Source: Blepharisma stoltei ATCC 30299
Lineage: Eukaryota > Protista > Ciliophora
Length of the DNA stretch: 64,000 nucleotides
NCBI GenBank assembly: GCA_965603825.1
Contig: CBFDEM010000035.1
Span: 496,001 to 560,000, forward strand
Direction: 5' to 3'
The translations under genes were made by a program, and so were the position numbers. Of this stretch, positions 21,077 through 63,965 are shown piece after piece. Below the pieces are notes generated by a model. That model was not told the origin of the DNA and ran no database searches. It saw only the letters and a program-made list of their open reading frames with translations. Numbering within the stretch: the stretch's first letter is position 1; the number at the start of each line of letters is the position of its first letter.

Positions 21077-21574
21077 TATATTTTATGTTTTATATATAAT
21101 TTAAGTGAATTAAGTGATGGTTATAGGACTATGATATTGATTTGCAAAATCTATTAAGGCAATATTTTTTTACTATTTGACAAATACCATTTTATTATAA
21201 TAAATCAATTTTTCTAGTCCCCTGATCATACAAGAAGAGATTTGACCTCATTAACTGATATTAAAGATCTATTCATAGTAAAAGAATATTTTCATTTTTT
21301 AAGTCAATAAAAGATTAGTTATAAAAATTCTCAAAATTCCCAAAGTTTAAAGAAATATACTAATTTTTAAAATATGCCAATGAGGCAGCAATAATTTTTT
21401 TAAATATCGATTCTCACTATCAAAATTAAAAATGGGATTTTGTCTATCAAACCTAAATAAAAAACGATCGAAAAGCTTTTAACCTACATGATTGTTTTAT
21501 TGATTATGCATTTATAATCTTAGTTATGCATATAAAGCTTTCTGAAAATTCACAATTTAATAAATCTCCTAAAT

Positions 21575-24500
21575 ATGAGAGTAACTAATCGCATCGAGCT
21601 GAAAATTCTCCTAATTGTCGAAATCTTCTTAATTCCAAGTACCTTTGCTTTATGTTCTATAGATTGCCCATCATATTGAGTATTTCCTAAATTAGATCGG
21701 AGATGGATTATGCCAGAAGAGTTGTATGAATCAAGGCTGCAATTTTGATGGAGGCGACTGTGAATATTGATGCACTTATGGTTTGGGTTGCAGCCTAAAG
21801 AGTAATGGTGTTTGTGATCCTTCGTGTGATTTGGCTTATTGTGGGTATGACCATGGAGATTGTGGATATTGTTCTGATGGTTGTACTTTAGAATTTCTTG
21901 AAGACAAAACATGCCATCAAGAGTGCAGCAATTCTTTATGCAATTTTAACAATTATGCCTGTGTAAATTTTATATAGGAATGCAATCCAGGGTGTCAAAA
22001 TTCAATGATGGGAAATGGAGTATGCGATTGGGCCTGCATGAACTATTATTGCCAATATGATGGTGGGGACTGCTGAAATTCCTCCTGTAGCCCTGGATGC
22101 ACTGGATATTTATTGACAAATTATATATGTGATTCTGCCTGCAATACACCTAGTTGTTATTACGATAATAGTGACTGTTTGTGTGCTGCTGGATGCTATC
22201 CAGATTTATTAGAAAATAACTCTTGTGACCTTGTTTGCTCAACAAAAAAATGTAATTTTGACAATTATCTATGTGGAGATTGCGCAACTGGCTGTTTTGA
22301 TTATATGATAAATGATGGGATTTGTAATGATGAGTGCTATAATGAAGGCTGTGGATATGATGGAAATGACTGTCCATCTTGTGCTCCTGGCTGCTTTAAT
22401 TCTGATCTTGGATCATGCAAGCCTGAGTGCATGGTTTTAGACTGCAGCTTTGATATGGATTGCTTAGATAGAGATATGCGTTTATCATCATATTCCTCTC
22501 AAATTGCTATGCGAGATTGAAACTATCCTGTAAATACTCCAAATTCTTGCTATGCAAATCATGGCTGCAGCTTAAATTATAATAATTTTGCAAAAAATTG
22601 TTCACTATCATGCGATTATGCAGACTGCTTTTATGATTATTTTCTATGCTGATCAAGTACTTGTGATGATCCAAATTGTATGTACTGTGACTATTCAAAT
22701 CGAGAAATTTGCTATCAATGCTATAATATGCAATTTTATACTGATTGCGTTGATAGCTGTCCAAGATATTATTATACAAGAGCTTTTGACTGATATGGAG
22801 TTATTTGTGCGCCAGCTCCAGATGAATCTACAGAAGAGGTTCCAGATGAAAGCTTTGTAAGTGCTGATAATGCAGATCAAGGAGATGGCTCAATAAATTT
22901 TCCATATAATTCGTTATCTTATGGGCTTGCACAATTAAAATGAAAATATTCAGTGATTTATTTAATGAAAGGCACTCATAATTTAACATTAGTTATAGAT
23001 GATGAGTACCTATGGGAAGCAACAACTTCAAGGCCGCTATACAGAATATCTACTAAATTAGCTGAAGTTACTGCTAAGCCTTTATACTGTTCAATATATA
23101 ATCATCCAGATTGCGTTAATGATGGGGAGAGTATAACTATTTTGGTTGATACTCGCCCAATGACAATTGATATACTAGCAAATGTTACTTTTGAAAATAT
23201 TATTTTTGATGGAAGCACAAAGTTCAGTCCTTTTTGCACTGACTGCGACTATTGTAAAATCGCAACAAGCAGTAATGGTGTAGTTGCTGATGACCATGGA
23301 AATACTCTGAGTTCAAGTTCTTATGTCCCTCAATCAATTTGCGATCAATTCCATAATACAAATTTCTTTGAAATTAGTTCGAATGGAATTTTAAATTTGC
23401 ATGTAATTTTTACTTAGAATGCGGAAATTAATAATTTCAGGCAGCAGTACAAATCAATTATTACTATTAAAGGTGGGATTTTGGATATGAACTCTGTTAC
23501 TTTTTACAATATAATGAGCAAGCCTGGCAGCGGAGTTATTTTATCTAATGCTTGCAGCAATAGCTATTGTGGAGAAATCCACTTTATTAATAGCTCAGTA
23601 TCTTTACTTAATAATGGCTATGAAGTTAATGGCGCGATTGATTTGGCTGGCTTTATGGTCCTAAATCAAATAAAGTATGTTGAAATGGAAGATGTCGAAA
23701 TCGAATATAATTTAGTGAACAGCATTGATGTAGAATCTTCAACAAAAGCTATGTTCACTTTCAATGATATTTTGAATTTAACGGTTTTAAATTCAGTTTT
23801 TCAATACAACTTTAATTATGATGCTTTTTTCTTTATCAACCAATATAAACTGAGCATGCCTCTTGAAATTGATGATGAGAAAAAACTGATATATGAAAAT
23901 TTAATTAATATTCGCATTGAAAATACCCTTTTCCAAAACAACAGCGCTATTACAACAACAACTTTTATAATCCAGTTTAATAGAGGTCTTCAAAATATCT
24001 TGATAAATAACTGCACTTTTCTTAATAATTTTTCAGAAGATTCTGGAATCATTGACATTTCATACAAGGGTAAGATATCTCAAGAGTACATTAGTGGAGA
24101 TTCAAGAGTCACTACATTGGATTCAGGTCAAAAAATAATAGCTAATTTTCCTGCTCGAAACATAACACTTAAGAACTTGAATTTCACAAAAAATACATTT
24201 GGAGGATCAGGTATCTCTTTATCGAACTTGCCCGATCTTTATATTTTAAACTCAACTTGAAATGGAAACGGAGACAATTTAAACGAAGACGCCAACACTG
24301 TGACTATTGACTATATGAAAAGCTTAGGCTATCTCTATATAAACTCATCAGTAGTGTCGACTTTACCAAGTTGCAAATCAGTCATTTCAACAACAAGCAT
24401 AAATAATTTTATTTTTCACTGCAACACGATCTCTCAAAATTACTGTACTCAAAATAATGCAGGACTAGCTTTAACAAACTGTTTAAATCAAACTATTCTA

Positions 24501-27500
24501 CGAAATTCTGTATTTTCTGAGAATAAGTCAAGTGGAAATAGCATTGCTTTGGCTGCAACTATGTCCTCAGCACTGGTTTTGAAGAACTTGACATTTAAAA
24601 ATAACTATTTTTATAACGGTGTTCGGAGCTCAGTCGTAACATTGAGCTCTTCTACATCTACAAGTAATTTTACACTCATTAACTGTAATTTCATTGGTGG
24701 AGAAACGCCTATTTCAGCTAGTTCAGTCCAAAATATAACATTGGAAAATACAACTATAGAATCATTATCAAACTCATTTTATAGCACATTGATTTTTTCA
24801 GGTAGAGATAGTATAAAATCAAGGATTTCAATGAAAAATTGCACAATAAAAAATAATAATCCTAAGCTAGGGCATATCTCTATTTCATCATTATCAACTC
24901 AATCATATATTTTGTTAAGAATGAGTAATATGACTTTTTCAAATAATGGGGGAAGTCAAAGTATTATTTTCGTTGATAAATCAGTTATCCTGGACCCTTC
25001 TAGTCAAATTCTATATTCAAATTTTAACAATAACAACGTCACTTCTATCTATGCTAGACACCTATCTGGGATTCTTTCAGTAATCTCATGCGTTTTTGAT
25101 TCAAATTCTGCCGGTTATGCCGTAGTTTTGAATTTAGATCATGCAGCCCCTGCTGAAACACATTTATCTGATTGCTCAATAACCTCCAATAGGGGTAGTA
25201 ATATTTTGTATATTAACGGAAACTCTGCTATCACTAAAATAGCTACCTCGAATCTATATTTTTTTAATAACACTGGTAATGCAGTTTTTATTGCTAAAGG
25301 AAACTGAGTTGATCAAAATTCAAATTTTTATCAAAATTCAGCTTCACAAGGAGGATCAGCAATAATTAAAGATGAATCGGGAGCAAGTTTAGAAGGCACG
25401 ATTTTTAAGAATAATTCTGCAACTTCTGATGGAGGAGCTATTTATGTTTCAGGGGCCTCAAATATAACATGCAATAACTGCAAAATTGTTAAAAACACTT
25501 CGAAACATAATGGCGGAGGACTTGCAGTCGACCAAAGCTCTATTTTTATTTTTAACAATTCAGTTTTTTCTGAGAACAAATGTGATATGAGAGGTTCAGC
25601 CATTTCTATTCTTGGCTCAGAATCTTCATACTCCTATCTTATAAATACAGAAATATTATACAATATCGCAGGATCTATGGCTGCTATTTCATCAGACAGC
25701 GGATTGTTTTCTCTTCAAAGCTGCTCGCTATTTAATAACACAGGCTCTACAAATTCTGGAATTTTTATGATTTATTCTACATGCAACATTTCTGACTCAT
25801 CATTTTCGAACCATACAGGAACTAGTGGAAGTGATCTCTATATAAATATCGATTCAAGCATATTTGTATATAACACAAATTTTAAAAATTCTATTTCGAC
25901 TAGCTCAGGAGGAAGCATCTCAGTAGCAGATAGTTCATTATCCTGTGAAAAATGCAATTTCTTAAATACAAAAGCTCCTACAGGAGCAGTACTCCAATGC
26001 ATTTCAGGAAGCAGATGCAAACTGATTAGTTCTTCTATTTTCAGTAGCTCTGCATCCAGTACAGGAGGAGTAGTTTATATATATGACAGCACTCTGAGTG
26101 CCAATAAAACAACTTTTAAAGAATATATCAGTTCTGCAATTGAAGCAAGCAAATCCAAGTCTATTGAAATAATTAATTCAGCATTTCAGAATGGAATGAA
26201 TGATGATGGTGCAGCTATAGATTGTGAAGATTGCATGAATGTTACAATAATTGGAAGCAAGTTTACAAATTTAGTATCATTTAATGGTGGAGCTATTAAA
26301 TTCAATCATGCTACGCTGACTGTGTCAAATCTTATAGCAAATATCGAAAGCTCTATTTTTGAAAATTGTGCATCTCAATATGGAGGGTCTATTTATTCAA
26401 ATAATATCAACATAGGAATAAAAAACAGTAAATTCTTAAACAATTCAGCTACTAATTTAGATTCAAACAGTTCATGCACAACAGGACAGGGCGGAGCTTT
26501 ATATTTGGCATCTACAGTTCAAGTCAGCATTTCTATTAAGGACTCAGTTTTTTCTGATAATAATGCATGCCTAAGTGGCGGTGCTGTACAATGATATAAT
26601 TCTCAGCCAGTTATTTCCAATTTATCATTTTCAAATAACTCAGCTTTATATGGAGATGATTTAGCCTCATTTCCTCTTGGCTTAAAAGTTTTAAGTTATA
26701 AAAGAAGACTTGAAGTACAAGTGCCATCTGCTCCAGGACAATATTTATCAAGCCCATTAATTGTTGGAATAATAGATCACTATAATCAAACAGTTCTAAC
26801 AGAGAATACAAGCACCTGCCAACTGGAAGTAGCAGATAGCTCGAACTATTCATTATCAGGAAAAACTAAAGTTCAAGCATCTTCAGGAGTTTATAACTTT
26901 AGCGAAGTTATAGTAACTGGAGATCCTGGAAGCAAAGTGGGGTTTACTCTTTCTTCATCGATTATTTCAAGCAGTTTACCATCAGATTCACTTGAGTTTG
27001 AACTTCGAGAATGTGAGGTAGGCGAAGCTTTAATCGCTAAGACATGCCAAATTTGTGAATCTGGAACTTATAATCTCAATGCGGGTAGATCTTGTAAAGA
27101 TTGCCCAACCTCTGCTAAGTGCTATGGGAAAAATAATATTTATCCCAAAGCAGGCTATTGAAGAGTAAGCAACTTGACCGACAATTTTTTGAAATGCCCA
27201 AACTCCAATGCATGCTTAGGAGGAATTGAGTCTAAAAATTCTGTAGGAGCTTGCAAAAAAGGCTATCAAGGAAATTTATGCCAGTCTTGTGAAGAAGGTT
27301 ATTCAAGAAATGGCGATGATAAATGCTCGAAATGTCCTAATCCAGCCACAAATGCTTTAATATTAGTAGGGATGATTACCCTGGCTTTGTTTATTGTACT
27401 TATTATGACGAGGTCATCTATTAAATCAGCATATAAACCGAAGTCTCTTACATCAGTTTATATCAAAATTTTTATGAATTATTTACAACTTGTAGTTGTT

Positions 27501-28805
27501 ACAGCTTCTTTCAATTTAAATTGACCTCAGCTTGTACTGCAGTTATTTTCGATTCAAAATACAGCAGGAAGCATGACTGACCAAATATTTTCAGTTGATT
27601 GCTACTTGCAAGGGCAGAAATCAAAGCCATTTTTTTCAAAATTGATATTTATGGCTGTTCTCCCTTTGATTTTGGCAATTGTGACTATGATGTTTTGGGT
27701 TGGGTATTATCTTTGTGTTTTAGAAACAAAGTACCTTAAAAATAAATTTTTAGGCTCATTAGTAGTCCAGCTCTTTCTAATACAGCCTTCACTTGTGAAA
27801 TACAATTTTTCAAATTTTAACTGTATGGAAATAGAATCAGGCTCTTATTACCTTAGATCTGACTTAGACATTAAATGTTGGGATGCTGAGCATATTACTT
27901 ATTCTTTGACTGTTGCTCTTCCAAGTATTATAATTTGATGCATTGCAATACCAACTCTGTGTTTATGATCTATACATATGCATAGAGAACAGTTAAATAC
28001 AATAGAACTAAAACTTCAATTTGGCTTTTTATATCTTGGCTTCAAAGATAAAACTTATTATTGGGAATTTACTATTCTCTATAGAAAAATACTGATTATC
28101 TGTTGCTCGGTTTTTCTGGGATCTATATCAACACGAGTTCAAGCATTAACTGTTTTCTTTTTGCTGCTTTTTTGCTTTTTCCTACATCGCAAAATTGAGC
28201 CATATTGTACAAATCAGCTCAATTCATTGGAAACTAAATCAATTCTTGTATCTGGACTGACTATTTATAGTGGTTTATACTATTTGACAGATGATTTGGC
28301 ATACTCTGCAAGAGTTTTTCTATTTATAATAATTGTATCAGCTAACTTGTTTTTCTTAGCCCATTGAATTTCGAGCATGACTGGAGTAGGGATCTCAATT
28401 TTGTACTCAAAAATCAAATTTCTTAGGAGAATGATGCATGGAACAAGAATCGAAAAATGGATTCAGAGTATTTCTCCTATCAATATAAGCGATCAAGAAA
28501 CAGACTTAGATAAAAATTCTATCACCAAAGAAATTCAGAATATTTCGATGAATTCTATTATTACCTATAACACTGAAGAAGGAGACTCACCAGGACTGAA
28601 AAATTGGAAAAGGTTAAAATTTAGTGAAATCAACCAAAGTCCAGAAGTATCAGTATTCGAAATTAAGGCAATTAATGTAGAATGTGATCAAAGTCGTGAA
28701 AGAGATAGCATTTCTATTTTAAAAGAAGCTGATGATATTTCCATTTTTGAAAAAGCACCATATCCAACTTTAAGGGAGGTAGAAGAAGATCAATTAGAGG
28801 AGTAA
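21575..28805 (+). CDS. Giant LNR/beta-helix/multipass receptor copy B (~2394 aa); introns 21680-21695, 21963-21977, 23403-23417
   Basis: Continuous frame with TGA=Trp, a 16-nt first intron and two 15-nt introns. Same domain order as A. Confidence 0.88.
21680..21695 (+). other. 16-nt intron
   Basis: GTATTTCCTAAATTAG, accounts for the frame change between signal peptide and LNR exons. Confidence 0.9.
21963..21977 (+). other. 15-nt intron
   Basis: GTAAATTTTATATAG. Confidence 0.9.
23403..23417 (+). other. 15-nt intron
   Basis: GTAATTTTTACTTAG. Confidence 0.9.
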
Positions 28806-29889
28806 ATTCTATACTTTATGGCAGAAGTTCTACTTTTAATATGTTTAAATTTTTAAATATAATATAATGCCATTAAAAATACTTTCAAATATTGCTTAAA
28901 ACTTAAAACTAAAATTATTCAAATATTTAATTATTTTAGGTAACTATAAGCAAAAAAGTATCATAATTAAAAATATTTTTAATGAATATATATAACTGCA
29001 AATTAATTTTGATCTTTTACTAAACCTAAACCCAATTTCATTTATCTAGCTTCATATCCTTGATTTTCTAGCCAAACTGAGTGATTGGAGTTTAAAATCA
29101 TTTATCATACCAATAAATGTTTGACAGAGTTCTTTTAGTTTTCATGAGAATATGGTAATTTAAATTTTAAAGATATTATATGAAACACTGTACAGAGATA
29201 TAATGGCACGATAGATTTTTTTGTCTTGATTGCATTTTACCATTTTTTCTACCATTCTTATAGCATCTATATATTAATTACATTGATTGTCCAATGCTAA
29301 AGCCTTATGGCTTCTTTAATAACTGATCTTGATTTTCATCAGCTTTTCCTTTTGAAATCTTGTCATATATCATAATTTTAGAAAAGAATTACATAGCATT
29401 TGAATTAGCAAATGCCGCTAGAGATCACAATTGAGATGTGCAAAACCACAATTCACATTTGAAAGATGTGCAATTACCTGAACTTAGCATAAGTTCGACT
29501 TTCATGCATTTCAAACTGCATCATGCATTGTATATGTCTACGTATAATATCACAGATTTACCATTATATTAACATGGTGCTCTTCTTTGCTCCATGATGA
29601 ATTAGCCAAACACAGCAGATTTACTGAAATACCCCAGCTACAGAAAAATCTAGATTAAATTTTCATACTTTTGCAATTTCAATTTTATTAATGATTTAAT
29701 ATATCATTCGGAAGCATAAGGCATCCTTACTTTATTTTGATATTATACTGCTTTATTTATCATTTATTAAGAAAAATTAAATTAATTAAAAATTTCAACT
29801 TAGCCGTGTATTATACTGAATATTTCATTTTTATTATAATTACTGCTATTCAGTTGATAAGCGTTGCGGTTTTAATAAATCTCCTAAAT

Positions 29890-32800
29890 ATGAGAGAAAA
29901 TAATTTCTTCAGGCTGAAAATTCTCTTAGTTATCGAAACTTTCTCAATTCAAACTGTTTTGGCTTTATGTTCGATAGATTGTCCGTCCTATTGAGTAAGT
30001 CCTAAAATAGATTGGAGATGGTTGATGTGATAAGAGTTGTATGAACCAAGGCTGCAACTTTGATGGAGGTGACTGTGAATATTATTGCACTTACACCCTA
30101 GGCTGTACTTTAAAAAGTAATGGGGTGTGCGATTCTTCATGTGATTTGGCTTACTGTGGATATGACCATGGAGATTGTGGATACTGCTCAGATGGCTGCA
30201 GTTTAGAATTTCTTCAAGATACAGCATGCCATCAAGAATGCAGTAATTCTTTATGCAATTTTAACAATTATGAATGTGTAAATTTTATATAGGAATGCAA
30301 TCCAGGATGCCAGTATTCAATGCTCGGAAACGGTGTATGCGATTGAACCTGCATGAACTATTATTGCCAATATGACGGAGGAGATTGCTGAGACTCTTCG
30401 TGTAGCTCTGGATGCACTGGATATTTATTGACAAATTATTATTGTGATCCTGAGTGCAATACACCGAGTTGCTTTTATGATAATGGAGATTGTTTATGTG
30501 CTGCTGGATGCTATCCAGATTTGCTAGAAAATGGAATATGCGATCCTGTCTGTTCAACAGCGCCATGCAATTTTGATAATTATTTATGTGGAGATTGCGC
30601 AACTGACTGCTTCAATGATATGATAAACAATGGATTTTGTGATAGTGAGTGTTATAATGAAGGCTGTGGATATGACGGAAATGATTGCCCAACTTGCGCT
30701 TCAGGATGTTTTAATTCAGATCTTGGACTATGCAAGCCAGAGTGTTTAGTTTTGGATTGCGATTTTGACCTTAACTGTATAGAGCCCAATATTATTCAAT
30801 CATCATTTTATGCCCAAATTGCTGCACACGATTGAAATTATCCTGTGAATACTCCTAATTCTTGTTATGCAAAGCATGGCTGCAGCTTAAATTATAATAA
30901 TTTTGATTGGCATTGTCAAGATGCATGCAGCAACGCTGACTGCTTCTTTGATTACTTTCAATGTTGGTCCTATAGCTGCTATGATCTTAATAACTGTGGA
31001 TTTTGTGCTACCTCAAATTCCAAAATGTGCGGATATTGTTTAAATAAACAATTTTATAATTACTGTGTTGATAACTGTCCTAGATATTATACACCTTACT
31101 ATTACTATAAAATGGACGTAGTCATTTGCGCTCCAGTTTTAGATGGATCTACAGAGGAAATCCCAGATGAAAGTTTTATAAGCGCTAATGACGTAGAGCA
31201 AGGGGATGGCTCAATTGATTCCCCATATAATTCTTTATCTTATGGGTTGTCACAATTGGCATGGAAATATTCAGTTGTTTACTTGATGAGAGGTATTCAT
31301 AACTTAACACAAGTTATCGATGATGATTACCTTTTGGAAGCTACAGCTTCAAGGCCATTATATAGGACATCTAATAAATTGGTTCAAATAACTATAAAGC
31401 CATTATATTGTTCAATTTATAGCCACCCAGACTGTGTAAATGATGATGAGAGTATAACGATTATAGTAGATACTCTACCAATAGCAATCGATATACTGAC
31501 TAATGTTACATTTGAAAATATAATTTTTGATGGGAGCACAAAGTTTAGTCCTTTTTGCACTGATTGTGACTATTGTAAAGCAACTACTAGTGATGATGGA
31601 GTAATTACTGATGATCATGGAAATACTCTGGATTCAAATTCTTATGTGCCTCAATCCACTTGTGATGAATTCCATAATACAAATTTCTTTGAAATTGGTT
31701 CTAATGGAATTTTATATTTAAATGTATTTTTTATTTAGAATGTGGAAATTAATAATTTTAGGCAACAATACAATTCAATAGTTACTCTTAAAGGTGGAAT
31801 ATTGGATATGAGCTTGGTGAGCTTTTACAATATAATGAGCAAACCTAATAGTGGAGTTATTGTATCTAATGCTTGCAGCTCAGATTATTGTGGAGAATTA
31901 CATTTTATTAATAGCTCAGTATCTTTACTGAATAATGGTTATGAAGTTAATGACGCAGTTGATTTGGCTGGATTTATGGTTCTAAACCAAATCAAATATG
32001 TTAAATTTGAAGATATTACAATTGAGTATAATTTAGTAAATAGCATTGATCCAGAATCTTCAACAAAAGCAATGTTTACTTTCAATGAAATTTTGAATTT
32101 AACGGTTTTAAATTCAGTTTTTCAATACAACTTTAATTATGATGCATTATTCTTTATAAATCAATATAAGCTGGACATGCCACTTGAAATTGATGATAAT
32201 AAAAAGTTGGTATATGAAAATTTGATAAATATTTGGATAGAAAATGCACTTTTTCAAAACAATAGCGCTATTACATCGTCAACTTTTATAATTCAGTTTA
32301 ATAGAGACCTTCAGAATATCTTGATAAATAACTGCACTTTTCTTAATAATTATTCAGAAGATGATGGTATCATTGACATTTCATACAAAGGGAAGCTAAT
32401 CCAAGAGTACATCAGTGGGGATTCAAGAGTTACAACATTGGATTCAGGCCAAAAAATAAAAGCTGATTTTCCTGCTAAAAGCATAACACTTAAGAACTTG
32501 AATTTCACAAAAAATACATTTGGAGGATCAGGTATCTCTTTGTCGAATTTACCAAATCTTTATATTTTAAACTCAACTTGAAATGGAAATGGAGACAATT
32601 TAAACGAAGATGCCAACACTGTGACTATTAATTATATGAAAAGCTTAGGCTATCTCTATATAAACTCATCAGTAGTATCGGCTTTGCCAAGTTGCAAATC
32701 AGTCATTTCAACAACAAGCATAAATAATTTTATTTTTCACTGCAACACGATCTCTCAAAATTACTGTACTCAAAATAATGCAGGACTAGCTTTAACAAAC

Positions 32801-35800
32801 TGTTTAAATCAAACTATTCTACGAAATTCTGTATTTTCTGATAATAAGTCAAGTGGAAATAGCATTGCTTTGGCTGCAACTATGTCCTCAGCACTTGTTT
32901 TGAAGAACTTGACATTTAAAAATAACTATTTTTATAATGGTGTTGGGAGCTCAGTCGTAACATTGAGCTCTTCTACATCTGCAAGTAATTTTACACTCAT
33001 TAACTGTAATTTCATAGGTGGAGAAACGCCTATATCTGCTAGTTCTGTCCAAATTTTTGCATGAGAAAACAGCATCGTCGAATCATTGTCAAGCTCTTTT
33101 TATAGTGCCTTGGTTTTTTCAGGTAGAGATGGGATAAAATCAAAGATATTATTGAAAAATTGCACAATAAAAAATAATAATCCCAAACTTGGCCATATCT
33201 CTATTTCATCATTAGCAAGCCAATCATATGTGTTATTAACTATGAGTAATATGACTTTTTCAAACAATGGTGGAGGCCAAAATATTATTTTTATTGATAA
33301 ATCAGTTAATCTTGACTCTCCAAGCCAAATATCATATTCAAACTTTACCAATAATAAAATGACTTCAGTGTACGCTAGACATTTATCAGGAACCCTTTTG
33401 GTATTTTCATGTGTTTTTGATTCAAACTCAGCTAGTTATGCCGTAGTTTTGAATTTAGATCATTCTGTCCCTGCTGAAACACATTTATCTGAGTCCTCAA
33501 TAACTTCTAACAGAGGAAGTAATATTTTGTATATAAACGGAAACACTGCTATTAGCCAATTGACTACTCTAAATCTATATGTTTTTAATAACACTGGCAA
33601 TGCAGTTTTTATTGCTAAAGGGCATTGGACTGATCAATATTCAAATTTTTATCAAAATTCAGCTTCACAAGGAGGATCAGCAATAATTAAAGATGAATCG
33701 GTAGTCAATTTAGAAGGGGCCGTTTTTAAGAATAATTCTGCGACTTCTGATGGAGGAGCTATTTATATTTCAGGGGCCTCAAATATAACATGCAATAACT
33801 GCACAATTGTTAAAAATACTTCAAAACATAATGGCGGAGGACTTGCAGTCGACCAAAGCTCTATTTTTATTTTTAACAATTCAGTTTTTTCTGAGAACAA
33901 ATGTGATATGAGAGGTTCAGCCATTTCTATTCTTGGCTCAGAATCTTCATACTCCTATCTTATAAATACAGAAATATCATACAATATCGCAGGATCTATG
34001 GCTGCTATTTCATCAGACAGCGGATTGTTTTCTCTTCAAAGCTGCTCAGTCTTTAATAATACAGGTGCTACAAATTCTGGAATTTTTATGATTTATTCTA
34101 CATGCAACATTTCTGACTCATCCTTTTCGAACCATACAGGAACTAGTGGAAGTGATCTCTATATAAATATCGATTCAAGTTTGTTTGTATACAACACAAA
34201 TTTTAAAAATTCTATTTCGACTAGCTCAGGAGGCAGCATCTCAGTAGCAGATAGTTCATTATCCTGTGAAAAATGCAATTTCTTAAATGCAAAAGCTCCT
34301 ACAGGAGCAGTACTCCAATGCACTTCAGGAAGCAGATGCAAACTGATTAGTTCTTCTATTTTAAGCAGCTCTGCATCCAGTACAGGAGGAGTAATTTATA
34401 TATATGACAGCACTCTGAGTGCTAATAAAACAACTTTTAAAGAATATATCAGTTCTGCAATTGAAGCAAGCAAATCTAAATTAATAGAGATACTTGATTC
34501 AGAATTTAAAAGTGGCATTAATGATAATGGGGCAGCTCTCAATTGCATAGATTGCATAAATGTTACTATTATTGGAACTGAGTTTAAAAATCTTATATCG
34601 TCTGCTGGTGGAGCTATAAAATTTGATCACACTACAGTTACTGCATCAAATTTTATAGCAAATATTGAGAACTCGATTTTTGAAAATTGTGCATCTCTAT
34701 ATGGAGGATCTATTTATTCAAATAATATAAATATCGGAATTAAAAACAGTATTTTTAGAAACAATTCAGCAACTAATTTAGAATCTAATAGTTCTTGCAC
34801 AGATGGAGAAGGCGGAGCTTTATATTTGACATCCACAGTTCAAATTAGTGTCTCTATCAAAAATTCAGATTTTATAGATAATAGTGCATGCTTGAGTGGT
34901 GGCGCTGTACAATGATACTTGTCACAACCAACGATTTCTAATTTATCATTTTCAAATAACTCAGCTTTATATGGAGATGATTTAGCCTCATTTCCTCTTA
35001 GTTTGCTAGTTTTAAGCTATAAAAGAAGACTTGAAGTGCAGGTGCCATCTGCTCCAGGGCAATATTTATCAAGCCCATTAATTGTTGGAATTACTGATCA
35101 CTACAATCAAACAGTTCTCACTGAAAATACAAGCACTTGCCAATTGGAAGTCACAGATAGCTCGAACTATTCATTGTCAGGAAAAACTAAGGTTCAAGCA
35201 TCATCAGGAGTTTATAATTTTAGTGAAGTTATTGTGAGTGGGGAGCCTGGAAGTAAAGTAGGGTTTACTCTTTCTTCATCAATAATTTCTAGTGATTCCT
35301 TAGGTTTATCTTCTGAATCACTTGAATTTGAGCTTAGAGATTGTGAAGTCGGCGAAGCTTTGCTAGCTAAGACTTGCCAAGTCTGTGATTCTGGAACTTA
35401 TAATCTCAATGCTGGTGATTCTTGTAAAGATTGCCCAACTTCTGCTAAATGCTATGGGAAAAATAATATTTATCCCAAAGCAGGCTATTGAAGAGTAAGC
35501 AACTTGACCGACAATTTTTTGGCATGCCCAAATTCTCATGCATGCTTAGGAGGAATTGATTCTAACAATTCAGTGGGAACCTGCAAAAAAGGCTATCAAG
35601 GGAATTTATGCCAGTCCTGCGAAGAAGGGTATTCACGAAATGGAGAAGACACTTGCTCTAAGTGCCCAAATCCAGTCACAAATAGCTTAATATTAGTAGG
35701 GATGATAACCCTTGCTTTATTTATTGTCCTTATTATGACGAGGTCATCTATTAAATCAGCATATAAACCGAAATCGCTTACATCAGTTTATATCAAAATT

Positions 35801-37132
35801 TTTATGAATTATTTACAACTTGTAGTTGTTACAGCTTCTTTCAATTTAAATTGACCTCAGCTTGTTCTTCAGGTATTTTCGATTCAAAATACTGCGGGAA
35901 GCATGACTGACCAAATATTTTCAGTTGATTGCTATTTGCAAGGACAAAAATCAAAGCCATTTTTTTCAAAATTGATATTTATGGCTGTTCTCCCTATGAT
36001 TTTGGCATTTTTGACTATGATGTTTTGGGTTGGGTATTATCTTTTTGTTTTAGAAACAAAATACCTTAAAAATAAATTTTTAGGCTCTTTAGTAGTTCAG
36101 CTATTTTTAATACAGCCTTCACTTGTGAAATACAATTTTTCAAATTTTAACTGTATGGAAATAGAGTCTGGATCTTATTACCTTAGATCTGACTTAGACA
36201 TTAAATGTTGGGATGCTGAGCATATTACTTATTCTTTGACTGTTGCTCTTCCAAGTATTATAATTTGATGCATAGCGGTACCAACTTTATGCTTATGATC
36301 TATACATAAGCATAGAGAACAGTTAAATACTATAGAATTAAAACTTCAATTTGGCTTTTTATATCTTGGCTTCAAAGATAAAACTTATTATTGGGAATTT
36401 ACAATTCTCTATAGAAAAATTCTAATTATTTGCTGCGCAGTTTTTCTTGGCTCTACGTCAACACGAATTCAAGCATTAACTGTTTTCTTTTTGCTGCTTT
36501 TTTGCTTTTTCCTACATCGCAAAATTGAACCTTATTGTACAAATCAGCTCAATTCATTGGAAACTAAATCAATTCTTGTATCTGGACTGACTATTTATAG
36601 TGGTTTATACTATTTGACAGATGATTTAATCTACCCAGCAAGGATTCTTCTATTTATAATAATTGTATCAGCGAACTTGTTTTTCTTAGCCCATTGAATT
36701 TCGAGCATGACTGGAGTAGGGATCTCTATTTTGTACTCAAAAATCAAATTTCTGAGAAGAATGATGCATGGAACAAGAATCGAAAAATGGATTCAGAGTA
36801 TTTCTCCTATCAATATTAGCGACCAAGAAACAGACTTCGATAAAAATTCGATTACTAAAGAAATTCAAAATATTTCGATGAATTCTATTATTACCTATAA
36901 CACTGAAGAAGGAGACTCACCAGGACTGAAAAATTGGAAAAGGTTAAAATTTAGTGAAATTACCCAAAGTCCGGAAGTATCAGTATTCGAAATTAAGACA
37001 AATAATGTGGAGTATGACCATAATCATGAAAAAGATAGCATTTCTATTTTAAAAGAAGCTGATGATACTTCAATTTTTGAAAAAGTTCCATATCCGACTT
37101 TAAGGGAGGTAGATAATGAAGCAAAAGAATAA
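29890..37132 (+). CDS. Giant LNR/beta-helix/multipass receptor copy C (~2398 aa); introns 29995-30010, 30278-30292, 31724-31738
   Basis: Close paralog of B. Shares the 5' flank TTTAATAAATCTCCTAAATATGAGAG. Continuous frame with TGA=Trp. Confidence 0.88.
29995..30010 (+). other. 16-nt intron
   Basis: GTAAGTCCTAAAATAG. Confidence 0.9.
30278..30292 (+). other. 15-nt intron
   Basis: GTAAATTTTATATAG. Confidence 0.9.
31724..31738 (+). other. 15-nt intron
   Basis: GTATTTTTTATTTAG. Confidence 0.9.
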
Positions 37133-58493: not shown

Positions 58494-60653
58494 ATGTCTG
58501 AAGAAAAGCACAGAGGAAATAAAAAAACAAAATACAACAAAAGTCAAGAATTTTCACAAGACACCAGCCAGAGCTCATATAAAGTATTGAAAATAAGCAA
58601 AGACCACACAGATCGGCTAACAACTTTTATTAAAAGACATAGAAACGAGCTTCAAAGCAATTCAACAAATCGATCTCAAAGTCATTTTGACGATACCAAA
58701 ATGTTCGATCAAAGCTCATGCGACATTTATGAATCAATAAAGCATCTTGATGCTAAGCTGTATTCAAAGAAAATCAAAATAAACAGCAAAAAGCAAAACT
58801 GCTCCCCATCAGCTTCTCGCAGCATTTCTCCCAACCCATCAATCCCAAGGACCCCTAAAGAATTTATCACTGATATAAAGCGCCTACAAGAAACCTTGAA
58901 GGCAGATATAAACCAATCCTCATATTCCGCAAAAAGTGCAAGCTCCTATTCGTCTTTTATGATTTTAAAAAAAGCATATGAAAAGCTAGAAGGACTAGAA
59001 ATGCTCAGCAAGTCTCTTGATATTAGGAAAACCCAATTGGACGCAATGGAAAAAGAGCTCAGATCTAAAATGAAAAAGGTTAAAGATAAGGACGAGGATC
59101 TTGATAATAGAGAAATTACTATTGAAAAAATGAAAAGGATGGAACTGCAAATTGCTGAAAGAGAGCTTCAATTGAAAGAAAAAATGAGGAAGCTAGAAAA
59201 GAAAGAAGAGGAATTGTATGAAAATAATGAAAATCAGATAGAGTTTAGCAGAAATGAGAAAACTGGGGCAAGTTTTAAAGAAAATGAGGAGTTTGAGATT
59301 TATTCTGATATAATAACCCCAGCCTTTCAGGCAAGTGCTGCTCTCAAAAAAGAGCAAGACTACAGCACATTAGAAAGTGAGCTTAAAGAAGCAGCTTCAG
59401 AGCTAGAACAAAGGACTTTTGACTTGTTAAAAAGCGAAGAAAAGCTAGCAGAAAGAGAATCAATTTTATATGAGCAGCAGAAAGAGCTTAAACACAAAGA
59501 AAATGAACTAAAGAAAAAAGAAGCCAGCATATCAGATCTTGAAAATAAATATGCCGCACAGATTGATGAATTATCACACATTAAAGACTCAGAAAAAGCT
59601 CAATTATGCAGGATTGTTTTAGATGAAGTCATCTTAAAGGTTATTTCACAAAATCTTGAGAAACAAGCACATGAAATTGAAGCTGCAAAATTTGAGCAAC
59701 AAATAGCATCAGAAAAACTTCAATCAGAATTTGAGGAACTCCGGAAATTTAGAGAAAAGCTAGAAAATGAAGCTTCAAAACAGCTTGAAATCAAGCTAGA
59801 GCTGGATAAAAAAGAAAAAGAGCTTGACTTGCAAGAAAAAAGAATTACAGAACAAATAAGACTATTAGGGGAAGGAAAAGAAGACGAAGTTCTTAAAATG
59901 CAAGAAATTTTTATAAGTGAAAGAGAAAGTGCCTTACGAATTAAACAGCTGAAGCTATTAGAATACCAAGAAAGCCTAAAAGAGAGAGAAATTGAAATAA
60001 ATGAAAGAGAAAAAGAAATTTATTATGTAAGCTTAGAAGACTCATATAAGCAAAGAGAAAAAAATATAATTGAAAAAGAAAAAGAAATCGAGCTAAAATA
60101 TCGGCAACTTGAAACAGAATTTTTAGAAAAAGAAAAAAATATCAAATTGAGAGAAAAATTGTTAGCTGAACAAGAATCTGCAATAGAGCACAAAAGAACT
60201 AATGTTATCACTGGATGGGAAAATGTATTAAATAAATTCAAAAAAATCCAAAGGAATGATGAAAGCTCGTTTGAAGAAGAAGCCAAAAAGCTTAAAGAGC
60301 TAGAAAACTTGCTTAGGGAGAAGGAAGACGAAATGAATCAGAAAACTAAAAAACTGGATAAACTAGAAAAAAATATTGCAGCTGATGTATGTAATCTTAA
60401 AATAAGAGAAGAAGAAATTGAGGAAAGAGAAAAGGAGTGCAAAGAAAAGACGTTGATTCTGTTAAATAAAGAAAAATATTTGGAGCAAAAAGTAAAAGAA
60501 GTAAACAATTTGGTACTGCAACTTAATGATAATATAAGAAAAGCGAACCCTAGTCAGTCGCAGATTCAAAAAGATGAGTTTTTGGAAAATGCATTTGAAA
60601 CATGCCAGCCTGATAATAACCACAGATTGAGCAAGATTCTATTTGATATATAA
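58494..60653 (+). CDS. Long E/K-rich coiled-coil protein, 719 aa
   Basis: Uninterrupted ORF with extensive heptads. Confidence 0.85.
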   Translation: MSEEKHRGNKKTKYNKSQEFSQDTSQSSYKVLKISKDHTDRLTTFIKRHRNELQSNSTNRSQSHFDDTKMFDQSSCDIYESIKHLDAKLYSKKIKINSKKQNCSPSASRSISPNPSIPRTPKEFITDIKRLQETLKADINQSSYSAKSASSYSSFMILKKAYEKLEGLEMLSKSLDIRKTQLDAMEKELRSKMKKVKDKDEDLDNREITIEKMKRMELQIAERELQLKEKMRKLEKKEEELYENNENQIEFSRNEKTGASFKENEEFEIYSDIITPAFQASAALKKEQDYSTLESELKEAASELEQRTFDLLKSEEKLAERESILYEQQKELKHKENELKKKEASISDLENKYAAQIDELSHIKDSEKAQLCRIVLDEVILKVISQNLEKQAHEIEAAKFEQQIASEKLQSEFEELRKFREKLENEASKQLEIKLELDKKEKELDLQEKRITEQIRLLGEGKEDEVLKMQEIFISERESALRIKQLKLLEYQESLKEREIEINEREKEIYYVSLEDSYKQREKNIIEKEKEIELKYRQLETEFLEKEKNIKLREKLLAEQESAIEHKRTNVITGWENVLNKFKKIQRNDESSFEEEAKKLKELENLLREKEDEMNQKTKKLDKLEKNIAADVCNLKIREEEIEEREKECKEKTLILLNKEKYLEQKVKEVNNLVLQLNDNIRKANPSQSQIQKDEFLENAFETCQPDNNHRLSKILFDI

Positions 60654-60796
60654 GGAATTTTAACAGTTCTAATTTTTTCAATTTAAATTAAATTACCTTG
60701 TTTAATAAAAATCAAAACATTTTCTGAAACATATAATATATTATTGATTCAAGCTAAAAATATTTTTAATATAAGAAAGACGAATTAATTATCCTT

Positions 60797-62175
60797 CTAA
60801 AGGTCTTGCTCAAAGTTGAAGTTAAGTTTGATTGGGAGCTGGCTTAGAATTAGATCAGTTCTAATCTGTAGCTGGCTTGCCGTTTGCGAGTGGATTTGCC
60901 AAGTAGTGGTCGCGATAGCCTGATTATCCGTAGTTGTTGCTTTTAAGTTGCTGATTTTTAGAGTCTTTGCCAAGGGATAGGCGAAGTCAACAATAATGTT
61001 GGGAGAGACAAAGCTAAACTTGTACCCAATTGATTCAACTCTGCAGGAGTTTCCAGCTTGAGAAATTAAATCAGTGCATTTAAAACACGTAGAACTAGTT
61101 TGCAAGAAGTGCATGAATCACAAGCTAAATAAAAGTTACCTAAGCAGCTTGTAGAAGAGTCACTATTATAGAGGAAAAAGTTTGGATTGCATTGAGTGCA
61201 TACCTTGTCTGGTGTTCATTGTGCACAATCAAGAGGAGATTCTAAATAAAAATTACTTATGATGCTGCAACTTCGACTTGTCCAGCTTCTTGCGCCAATT
61301 ATTGCCACCCCGATGTTGGATGCTTGAGCTCAACACCTTGCCCATGCCCGATACTTTGCACATGCTTTGGAAATTATGGAGTGTGCACATCTTGCAACGA
61401 TCCAAATGGTGTCCTTGCAAATAATTGTCAATGTAAAACTAATTATGATCTCGAAGGACTTGCTTGTGTATTAAGTAGCATCAGAGCTATCATATAAAGT
61501 AACAATAGGCGAGTTTATACTAGCTTTTTTGAAGAATTGAATCTCATAATAGTATCCAATAATATGATATGCAATGCGAATTTCATTACCTGGATATATG
61601 GTATGAGTTAAAATTAAAGTTGAAAACTCTGGAGAAATAATTGTCCAAGTCCAAACGGATAGAGATTTGACAAAATAAAATACCAAAAATATTCATTTTC
61701 CTATGTAAAATATACCTGGGGGGGAAATAGGAACTGTCTTTCCTATCTTATCACCACGTCTTCAAAAATTATAATTTGTGGGATCACCATAAATAATTTT
61801 GACATAATAGGTAAAGTATCCAGAAGAATCTATCATGCCAACTGGAGTTGGATTTGCATCACTACCACCTTGCAAGTTCATTCAAATACTTACCCCATAC
61901 TCTAATGTGGAGGATGTAATGGCACTTACAATTCCATAGTCGAAAGCGCCAGAATTACGGGAACGATAAAGACCTTTACAAGTTACTTCTGATTCAGCTA
62001 TGCTCCCTCATGAAGTTTGGAAAGGCTCATTGTTATTAGAAGATAAGTCTTTGATCTTCCCATCTACTAGATTGTTTGGGGTAAAAACCCATTTTGCTAT
62101 AGGAGAATAAGCAGTAATACCAATGGAAAGACAGAAAATAACAAAGCATGCTTTTAGTTTGGTCAAGCTTGCCAT
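60797..62175 (-). pseudogene. Disrupted secreted LamG-like/Cys-rich surface protein gene: internal 212-bp inversion plus a 1-nt frameshift; introns 61701-61715, 61242-61256, 61125-61139
   Basis: Signal peptide MASLTKLKACFVIFCLSIGITA and LamG-like PIAKWVF/YGVSI-W-M/GK-W-IFLVF. The frame stops at TAA 61471-61473, Cys-rich coding lies on + at 61261-61470, and minus-strand coding resumes at 61241. The three introns match the consensus. Confidence 0.8.
61254..61477. other. Inverted coding segment bounded by 6-bp inverted repeats TACTTA (61254-61259) / TAAGTA (61472-61477)
   Basis: Re-inversion gives ...DSSDAT-YDAATSTCPASC...LACV-LKSPLDCAQ-W- in one frame, using intron 61242-61256. Confidence 0.9.
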
Positions 62176-63376
62176 TTAATAATTATATCCGTACACATAA
62201 ATAGGGATTATCGAAATAAATTTTAAAAAACGGATATAAAAGCCAGTTCTTAGAGCTCTAAAAAGGGATGAGACTTGAAAAAGACTTTAAAAATTAATAA
62301 TTTCAAATAAAAGCGCGCATAAGCACGTTCCATCGAAAATAAATCGTTACTTTTTTTGATGTTTCGAATATAGGTAACTTCTTCGAAACGACAATGAAGA
62401 GTTCGAATCTATTAAAGAGCACTGAAAAATTAAAAGCCAGTGGCTTAGCCTAAACTAAAAAATTAAGTCAGTCACTGCTATAAATATGTAATAATTTAAT
62501 TTGGTTATCTGATAATCTAGCCTCTAAATGCCAGCTCAATGAGGGCATTTTCTCGCTACCCTAGATTGTTCATAAATCTGTGACTCGATTCTAGCTTCAT
62601 TTAGGTTATTTAATAACCCAGAAATTCTGAAAATTCAAGCGGCCTTACTTGTCCACTTTCCTCCTGCACCTGCTTGGTCTTAGGGTCTCGCAGTATCAAG
62701 CACAGGAAGAGGTAAAACGCAATGAATGAAAGATACTGAATAGTCTTTGCCATTTCTTTCCTATCAGACATAAATCATGCACAAAAACCTAACCCTATAA
62801 TAAAAGTTCGGTAAGGAAATTCATGCAGTGGATCTTCTATTTTATTTTTATCATGCTATAATTTTAATAGCTTTTTAAGTCAACGATCAATAAGTTTTGG
62901 CTCTTAAGTTAAAGTAGCACAAATACCTAAATGGAAGCTTAGATCAATTATTCCGAAATACTAGAAATAATTTTTATTCAGTTGACTTATTTTAACCATC
63001 ATCTCAACTAAATGCAAACTTTCTGAATAAAATCTATGTGTAAAAGAAATCTCCATAAAGGTCATCCTGAAATAAAGTTGTGAATGGATTTAAAATTATG
63101 AACTGAAGCCACAATAAGGCTAAAATGTAAATTATATCTCACCTATAGTCATATAATGATGCTCGGTTTTCAATCTTTTATACGCTTACAAAATTATTTG
63201 TTTGCAGTATCGCACCTATCCTTAAGCTTGAAAAAATATGCAAGGTTAGATTAAATTATGGAAACTTTTATAAAGATTGTATTTTAATATGCTCACAGCT
63301 TATGGCCTTTAATGAGTTTTTTTCTTCAAATAGCACTATTGAAGTTTGAGCTCTATGCAATTATAAACATTAAAGA

Positions 63377-63965
63377 AATGATGAAAGTTCTTTTGAAGAA
63401 GAAGCAAAAAAGCTTGAAAACTAGAGAGAAGGAAGACGAAATGAATCAGAAAACTAAAAAACTAAATAAACTAGAAAAAATATTGCAGCTGATGTATGTA
63501 ATCTTAAAATAAGAGAAGAAGAAATTGAGGTAAGAGAAAAGGAGTGCAAAGAAAAGACGTTGGTGCTATTAAATAAAGAAAAATACTAGAGCTAAAAGTA
63601 AAAGAAGTAAACAATTTGGTACTGCAACTTAATGATAATATAAGAAAAGCGAACCCTAGCCAGTCGCAGCTTCAAAAAGATTAATTTTTGGAAAATGCAT
63701 TTGAAACATGCCAGCCTGATAATAACTACAGATTAAACAATATTTTATTTGATATATAAGGAATTTTAACAGTTTTAATTTTTTCAATTTAAATTAAATA
63801 ATCACAAATAGTTAAATGGCTTTTTAAACCCTAAAAATGTCTTTAGATTCCATTTAAAGATGCCAAATTTCTATCTATAATATTAGAATACCTTGCTTAA
63901 TAAAAATCAAAACATTTTCTTAAACATATAATATATTATTTTAAAATTAAAAACATTTTTAATAT
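63377..63965 (+). pseudogene. Degenerate duplicate of the 3' end and flank of the coiled-coil gene (source ~60255-60773)
   Basis: High identity by eye, a small deletion near 63420, premature TAG/TAA codons, and a 90-bp insertion at 63799-63888. Confidence 0.9.

What the first reader, a model, noticed from the sequence alone, without database searches (positions are those of the whole stretch)
61254..61477. Flipped coding segment between 6-bp TA-containing inverted repeats; re-inversion restores a surface-protein frame at both junctions
Seen: the minus-strand gene from ATG 62175 stops at ...GAT GCT ACT TAA (61471). The next 212 bp are coding on the PLUS strand (DAATSTCPASCANYCHPDVGCLSSTPCPCPILCTCFGNYGVCTSCNDPNGVLANNCQCKTNYDLEGLACV), then minus-strand coding resumes. 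The segment is bounded by TACTTA/TAAGTA. Flipping it gives ACT TAT GAT GCT...TGT GTA TTA A|gtaatttttatttag|AA TCT CCT with no base gained or lost, and the left repeat overlaps the donor of a canonical 15-nt intron. Established: spirotrich ciliates unscramble inverted segments via short pointer repeats, and PiggyMac-type excisases cut at the palindromic TA. I am not aware of inversion or scrambling being described in heterotrichs. Inference: this could be (a) an un-descrambled germline-like arrangement, (b) a cryptic IES re-ligated backwards during macronuclear development, (c) an invertible ON/OFF switch converting a long surface protein into a short secreted LamG-only form, or (d) a fixed mutational inversion in a decaying copy.
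Basis: partly seen in the sequence, partly recalled or inferred. Interest (0 to 1): 0.9.

Follow-up and report, generated by a model that had tools for sequence, protein, structure and literature searches.

The report
Small inversion breaking a duplicated gene
In the ciliate Blepharisma stoltei, a 212-base piece inside one of about 14 copies of a secreted-protein gene has flipped in place between two short chance repeats, and because that copy also carries a separate frameshift it looks like an ordinary broken duplicate, not a gene switch or programmed unscrambling.

Summary
The inversion is real. Thirteen paralogs in this genome (Blepharisma stoltei somatic assembly) are collinear only with the re-inverted form, and both breakpoints lie in a 6-bp inverted repeat (random breakpoints: 0.17%). 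The published, RNA-derived intron at 61242-61256 implies transcripts of the inverted form, so misassembly is unlikely.

The exciting readings are not supported. A separate 1-bp deletion at 61099-61101 truncates the gene even after re-inversion (354 versus about 437 aa). Nine paralogs carry the identical repeat pair, and none is flipped. The germline-inclusive (MAC+IES) assembly shows no eliminated sequence at either breakpoint. TA is uninformative, since 52% of random 6-bp repeat pairs contain it. Intact members are 434-444-aa secreted LamG/Cys-rich proteins, not long surface proteins, and 5 of the 13 other copies are also broken.

Best reading: a recent one-off microhomology-mediated inversion in a redundant paralog. 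This scan noted about eight other inversions in this genome (unchecked AI notes); the MITE-pair mechanism proposed for one is not supported here.

The parts
61471..62175 (-). 5' part of the gene: signal peptide plus LamG/concanavalin-A-like domain; 229 aa after splicing, ending at a TAA created by the inversion
   Evidence: Identical to database protein P0002. Domain assigned on the intact paralog P0001 by ESM Atlas features and Foldseek.
61701..61715 (-).
   Evidence: Conserved in paralogs, most of which have an in-frame stop inside it; its removal gives P0002 exactly.
61472..61477 (+). Right arm of the 6-bp inverted repeat (TAAGTA on +); ancestral coding sequence
   Evidence: Same hexamer at the homologous site in 12 of 13 paralogs.
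61260..61471 (+). Inverted 212-bp segment encoding the first Cys-rich block, all cysteines intact
   Evidence: Opposite strand to its flanks in all 13 paralogs. Groups with the same C35 clade as the 5' flank (weak support 86/86). Translation.
61254..61259 (+). Left arm of the 6-bp inverted repeat (TACTTA on +); overlaps the intron 2 donor
   Evidence: Same hexamer in 10 of 13 paralogs; both arms together in 9.
61242..61256 (-). Intron 2, 15 nt, spliced in the published annotation of the inverted arrangement
   Evidence: Only 15-nt GT..AG removal that gives the annotated 69-aa model. Introns in that annotation need 10 or more spliced reads with 6-nt anchors.
61125..61139 (-). Intron 3, 15 nt
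   Evidence: Conserved in paralogs and spliced in paralog proteins; splicing in this copy not shown.
61085..61101 (-). Second lesion: 1-bp deletion (within 61099-61101) plus four copy-specific substitutions within 17 nt; frameshift removes the C-terminal domain
   Evidence: Absent from all paralogs; frame change in tblastn at residue 337/339 of P0001.
60797..61241 (-). 3' part of the gene: second Cys-rich block and C-terminal beta domain, original stop at 60797-60799
   Evidence: About 89-92% identical to close paralogs, which end at the same place.
60772..63352 (-). Whole duplicated unit (gene plus about 1.2 kb upstream), 84-92% identical to G000:C35:432.2-434.7 kb
   Evidence: blastn.

Best explanation
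A one-off mutational inversion in a redundant gene copy. The ancestral coding sequence happened to contain a 6-bp inverted repeat 212 bp apart. A single replication or repair event (template switch, or microhomology-mediated end joining or break-induced replication) exchanged strands inside the two arms and flipped the spacer without gain or loss of bases. This put a stop codon directly after the LamG domain. The same copy also acquired a 1-bp frameshift 153 nt further downstream. The copy belongs to a birth-and-death family of about 14 secreted LamG/Cys-rich genes in which damage is tolerated. Shown: the inversion, its direction, the pre-existing repeat, the second lesion, intact paralogs, and no IES at the junctions in the published assembly. 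Inferred: that the event is inherited in the germline, the repair or replication mechanism, and that both lesions are recent.
For: Thirteen collinear paralogs fix the ancestral orientation. A repeat of 6 bp or more at random breakpoints has P=0.0017, so homology guided the event. Nine paralogs have the identical repeat pair and are all forward. The independent frameshift leaves 354 aa against about 437. Five of 13 other copies are frameshifted or truncated and eight are intact. The MAC+IES contig is identical to the window over 60700-62400; the nearest IESs are after 59585 and 63224. No IES lies at the homologous sites in the 10 paralogs covered. All cysteines are retained, and the 3' part has pN 0.05-0.07 against pS 0.16-0.23 to paralogs, so the damage is recent. 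Microinversions flanked by short inverted repeats are a known mutation class (PMC8755829, PMC8604942).
Against: No reads were examined, so germline orientation and allele frequency are unknown; the MAC+IES assembly inherits its orientation from the somatic scaffold. Published template-switch inversions are much shorter (17-33 nt in apes; 2-5 nt spacers with arms over 9 bp in yeast), so a 212-bp spacer with 6-bp arms lies outside those series. Purifying selection on this copy's own branch is not significant alone (binomial P=0.08 and 0.14). The gene is still transcribed and its 229-aa product may be functional.
Confidence: 0.76

Rival explanations
1. Cryptic excision and backward re-ligation. 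The domesticated PiggyBac excisase cut at a TA or TTA/TAA in each arm during macronuclear development, and end joining put the piece back reversed; the variant then became the majority in this clonal strain's somatic nucleus.
For: Both arms contain TA and TTA/TAA, which are the reported cut-site preferences, and 10,048 cryptic IESs are reported in this genome. The junctions are seamless. In Paramecium only the central TA of the overhang has to pair (PMC3408717), so geometry allows it.
Against: 52% of random 6-bp repeat pairs here contain TA and 38% contain TTA/TAA. TA-only or TAA-only cutting gives a repeat of 6 bp or more in just 3% or 9% of cases. Cryptic events are low-frequency, whereas this is the consensus of 145x HiFi data. 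212-224 bp is not the main cryptic size class (72 bp).
Confidence: 0.1
2. Germline recombination between two oppositely oriented MITE-IESs inserted at the TTA and TAA in the arms; their excision leaves a seamless somatic inversion (the mechanism proposed in earlier finding s1-629518 for another locus).
For: The arms contain TTA and TAA in the orientation expected of BogoMITE target duplications (PMC9942856). BogoMITEs lie nearby (after 59007, 59585, 63224), and a related MITE sits at a TTA inside one paralog.
Against: No IES at either breakpoint in the MAC+IES assembly, although IES pairs 41, 159 and about 270 bp apart were detected elsewhere. The elements would have to be missed or since lost.
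Confidence: 0.07
3. Programmed rearrangement: a scrambled germline segment with pointers, or a reversible ON/OFF switch between a full-length and a LamG-only protein.
For: Seamless frame restoration at both junctions. The stop falls at the LamG domain boundary. Candidate scrambled, mostly inverted loci are reported in B. americanum.
Against: The ON state would still be frameshifted. In scrambling the somatic genome holds the correct order, here it holds the broken one. No IES or duplicated alternative segment at the junctions. 0 of 9 paralogs with the same repeats are flipped.
Confidence: 0.03
4. Assembly artefact.
For: No reads were inspected here.
Against: Assembly from two HiFi libraries, 145x. 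The annotated intron 2 needs 10 or more spliced reads with 6 mapped bases inside the inverted segment, while forward copies share at most 3 bases there.
Confidence: 0.01
5. On consequence only, compatible with any origin: the copy is not dead but now makes a working secreted LamG-only lectin, and only the 3' half is decaying.
For: The 5' ORF, signal peptide and intron 1 are intact and transcribed. The stop falls just after the last strand of the domain. The 5' part has the longest branch of the close family, with many amino-acid changes and no frameshift.
Against: The N-terminal domain is hypervariable in all copies, so the long branch may predate the inversion. Spliced introns downstream of the stop could trigger nonsense-mediated decay (general knowledge, not tested). 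No protein evidence.
Confidence: 0.2

Closest known systems
Microinversions flanked by short inverted repeats (template switching or MMBIR; PMC8755829, PMC8604942)
   Same: Precise in-place inversion of a spacer between pre-existing inverted repeats, no gain or loss of bases, one lineage only.
   Different: Spacer is 212 bp with 6-bp arms, against 17-33 nt (apes) or 2-5 nt with arms over 9 bp (yeast coding sequence).
Scrambled genes with inverted MDSs and pointers (Oxytricha, Tetmemena, Euplotes woodruffi, PMC9797194; candidates in B. americanum, PMC6101598)
   Same: An inverted coding segment whose ends carry short repeats and rejoin seamlessly; gene with many paralogs.
   Different: The broken order is in the somatic assembly and is transcribed; no IES flanks the segment; the corrected product would still be frameshifted.
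Cryptic IES excision in B. stoltei (PMC9942856)
   Same: TA- and TTA/TAA-containing boundaries in somatic-destined sequence.
   Different: Those are low-frequency deletions between direct repeats; this is a consensus-level inversion between inverted repeats. I found no report of backward re-ligation in the papers searched.
LamG / concanavalin-A-like (Laminin_G_3, PF13385) secreted proteins
   Same: N-terminal domain of the intact paralog resembles LamG by language-model features (0.96) and matches LNS, legume-lectin and pentraxin-like jelly-roll folds.
   Different: No Pfam hit by sequence; 8-16% identity to solved structures. Matches to the lectin-like subdomain of clostridial neurotoxins are the same generic fold and do not make this a toxin.

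Membership tests
Inverted-repeat microinversion | Segment is the exact reverse complement of the ancestral segment, in place | tested here: met
   13 paralogs collinear with the re-inverted model, no junction indel.
Inverted-repeat microinversion | Breakpoints lie within inverted repeats that existed before the event | tested here: met
   Identical pair in 9 forward paralogs; chance 0.17%.
Inverted-repeat microinversion | Heritable and fixed rather than regenerated in each development | not testable with these tools
Scrambled gene (inverted MDS) | Somatic genome and mRNA carry the corrected order | tested here: not met
   The somatic assembly carries the inverted order, and annotation implies inverted transcripts. 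A minor corrected fraction is not excluded.
Scrambled gene (inverted MDS) | MDS ends abut germline-limited DNA with pointers present twice | tested here: not met
   MAC+IES assembly identical to the window over 60700-62400.
Scrambled gene or invertible switch | Rearrangement yields a functional full-length gene | tested here: not met
   Frameshift at 61099-61101 persists; ORF 354 aa against about 437.
Invertible switch | Both orientations coexist in the population | not testable with these tools
   No reads. Indirectly, 0 of 9 paralogs with the same repeats are inverted in the assembly.
Excisase-made (cryptic IES) junction | TA or TTA/TAA at both boundaries | tested here: inconclusive
   Present, but also in 52% (TA) and 38% (TTA/TAA) of random 6-bp repeat pairs.
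Excisase-made (cryptic IES) junction | Somatic-only, germline in the original orientation | not testable with these tools
   The MAC+IES assembly is scaffolded on the somatic sequence and cannot show orientation.
MITE-IES-mediated germline inversion | Homologous IESs at both breakpoints | tested here: not met
   None in GCA_914767885.1 at this locus; closely spaced IESs are detected elsewhere.
LamG / ConA-like domain | Pfam profile match above cut-off | tested here: not met
   No Pfam family for P0001 at E<=0.1.
LamG / ConA-like domain | Jelly-roll beta-sandwich fold | tested here: met
   Model pLDDT about 60-80 over residues 60-215 (mean 54.6 overall); Foldseek E about 1e-4 to LNS, lectin and pentraxin-like domains; Atlas 22 of 30 hits Laminin_G_3. 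Tested on paralog P0001.

The most novel reading that the evidence does not exclude
The inversion was made by the ciliate's own DNA-excision machinery, which cut a cryptic TA-bounded segment and re-joined it backwards in the developing somatic nucleus. This would show that a PiggyMac-type system can invert as well as delete, a possible first step towards gene scrambling in heterotrichs, and might account for some of the other seamless inversions noted in this genome.
Probability: 0.1. Interest if true: 0.65.

Novelty: new member of a known kind. Interest (0 to 1): 0.16.

Why it matters
As most likely read, it matters little: one more damaged copy in a fast-turnover gene family, and a clean example of a seamless 212-bp inversion guided by 6 bp of homology that imitates a scrambling pointer. 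It is a useful caution for scans of ciliate genomes, because TA-containing short repeats are at chance level in this AT-rich DNA. It would matter if germline reads showed the forward orientation, since excisase-made inversions would link precise IES deletion to the origin of scrambled genes, and this locus is small enough to test by PCR.

Tried and rejected
The germline-inclusive sequence of the locus came back as flank of that neighbour.

Searches with no result: Pfam on TGA-free pieces and on P0001; homologue search with a 116-aa piece, blank because of the length window; the look-up of encoding contigs for P0001; single-sequence structure prediction, unusable at pLDDT 38.

Ideas rejected: hairpin strength as a site determinant (the repeat ranks only 14-21 of 66 comparable pairs in the gene); a MITE pair at the junctions; an alternative forward copy of the segment hidden in a nearby IES (none in five MAC+IES loci); a 16-nt reading of intron 3 repairing the frameshift (no suitable splice sites). 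My first alignment suggested the C6 copy was frameshifted; this was an alignment artefact, as it is annotated intact at 444 aa.

Full report
Source. The window is G000:C35:496001-560000 of a 41.46-Mb, 64-contig assembly. A paralog protein is named Blepharisma stoltei, and size, contig count, UGA=Trp and 15-nt introns match the published somatic genome of strain ATCC 30299, assembled from two HiFi libraries at 145x.

Observation. The anatomy is as reported: a minus-strand ORF from 62175 to a TAA at 61471-61473, a 212-bp plus-strand coding segment at 61260-61471, and 6-bp arms at 61254-61259 and 61472-61477. A DNA search of the genome found 13 close paralogs: nine in a tandem array on C26, one partial copy at C26:76 kb, two on C35 and one on C6. 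In each, this segment matches on the strand opposite to its flanks. The re-inverted model aligns to them as one collinear hit with no indel at either junction. The window copy is therefore the derived state. Trees of the separate parts place the inverted segment and the 5' flank with the two C35 copies and the 3' flank with one of them, with weak support, consistent with inversion in place.

Chance. Random breakpoints in a paralog give an inverted repeat of 6 bp or more in 0.17% of trials, so the repeat guided the event. TA adds nothing: 52% of 6-bp inverted pairs 100-400 bp apart contain TA and 38% contain TTA or TAA. Cuts defined only by TA, or by TTA/TAA, would leave a repeat this long in 3% or 9% of cases. 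The repeat is ancestral coding sequence: nine paralogs have the identical pair at the same spacing, and all are forward. It is not an unusually strong hairpin (rank 14-21 of 66).

The gene. Intact members encode 434-444 aa: a signal peptide, a hypervariable N-terminal domain, two Cys-rich blocks and a C-terminal beta domain. The only hydrophobic stretch in P0001 is the signal peptide, so these are secreted proteins, not long anchored surface proteins. Pfam finds nothing. The ESM Atlas (22 of 30 hits Laminin_G_3, score 0.96) and Foldseek on a moderate-confidence model support a LamG/ConA-like fold. The Foldseek list also includes the lectin-like subdomain of clostridial neurotoxins at 8-16% identity; this is the shared jelly-roll fold and not evidence of a toxin. 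There are three 15-nt introns (61701-61715, 61242-61256, 61125-61139). The annotated product of the window's 5' part is 229 aa, ending just after the last strand of the LamG domain.

Second lesion. The window copy lacks one base at 61099-61101, within a cluster of four private substitutions over 17 nt. After re-inversion the ORF still ends at 354 aa, without the C-terminal domain. The site is not an ancestral homopolymer, so an assembly error is unlikely. Five of the 13 other copies are frameshifted or truncated and eight are intact, which is the pattern of a birth-and-death family. All cysteines of the inverted block survive, and the 3' part shows pN 0.05-0.07 against pS 0.16-0.23 to close paralogs. 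Both lesions are probably recent, although selection on this copy's own branch is not significant alone (P=0.08 and 0.14).

Germline context. A neighbouring gene retrieved the MAC+IES assembly GCA_914767885.1 across the locus. It holds nine IESs over 17.8 kb, but none between 59586 and 63223, and it is identical to the window over 60700-62400. No IES lies at the homologous sites in ten paralogs, and IES pairs as close as 41-270 bp are resolved elsewhere. The MITE-pair mechanism suggested by earlier finding s1-629518 is thus not supported here. That assembly is scaffolded on the somatic sequence, so it cannot show germline orientation.

Transcription. The published annotation has a 69-aa model over 61166-61390 that works only if 61242-61256 is spliced. 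Introns in that annotation were called from at least 10 spliced reads with at least 6 mapped bases on each side, and forward-orientation copies share at most 3 bases upstream of this donor. I infer that transcripts of the inverted form exist, which argues against misassembly. This does not exclude a minority of forward molecules.

Mechanism. The best-supported account (0.76) is a single microhomology-guided inversion by replication or repair in a redundant paralog, probably inherited. Backward re-ligation of a cryptic IES (0.10) is geometrically possible, because only the TA must pair, but it explains neither the 6-bp match nor consensus-level frequency well. A missed or lost MITE pair (0.07), programmed scrambling or switching (0.03) and artefact (0.01) are less likely. 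Separately, the truncated 229-aa LamG-only product may be functional (about 0.2).

Comparison with what is known. It works like the inverted-repeat microinversions described in apes and yeast, but is longer. It fails three defining tests of a scrambled gene. The B. stoltei germline paper and its supplement do not mention inversions. Other readers in this scan noted about eight inversions in this genome; these are unchecked notes, and two follow-ups also concluded inherited damage.

Limits. 

Verdict. Observation confirmed; interpretation (d) favoured; new member of a known kind; interest 0.16.

Noticed in passing
window 60250-60693 and 63372-63799: A 444-bp direct duplication (91%) of the 3' end of the coiled-coil gene flanks the 2.6-kb gene unit 60772-63352, which is 84-92% identical to C35:432.2-434.7 kb; the copy looks inserted together with a long duplication of its target. 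The 349-bp IES called after 63383 ends in about 50 bp homologous to 60229-60280.
   Followed up: partly
IES after window 59007 (L031); also C35:431473 (L033): A BogoMITE with a TCA target duplication instead of the published TAA/TTA, and a second TCA-bound MITE-like IES; the target preference may be broader than described.
   Followed up: no
window 61085-61101: The frameshift sits in a cluster of five changes within 17 nt that produces an 8-bp palindrome, 153-169 nt from the inversion; possibly error-prone synthesis from the same event, but no template was found.
   Followed up: partly
G000:C26:12274-37317 (L021-L023): Tandem array of nine family members with a hypervariable LamG domain (many in-frame indels) and a conserved 3' half; four are frameshifted. 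Several share a TAA-bound IES just after the stop codon. Intron 2 is in frame and annotated as spliced in some copies and retained in others.
   Followed up: partly
G000:C35:433105 copy (L026): Intron 1 is 17 nt in this copy (P0007, 438 aa), longer than the usual 15-16 nt.
   Followed up: no
window 13560-37113: Three-copy tandem array with a period of about 8.2 kb; copies at 21556-28783 and 29871-37113 are 87% identical. No inversion among them.
   Followed up: partly
IES after window 51870 (L031): A 76-bp, almost perfectly palindromic IES bounded by ATATA.
   Followed up: no
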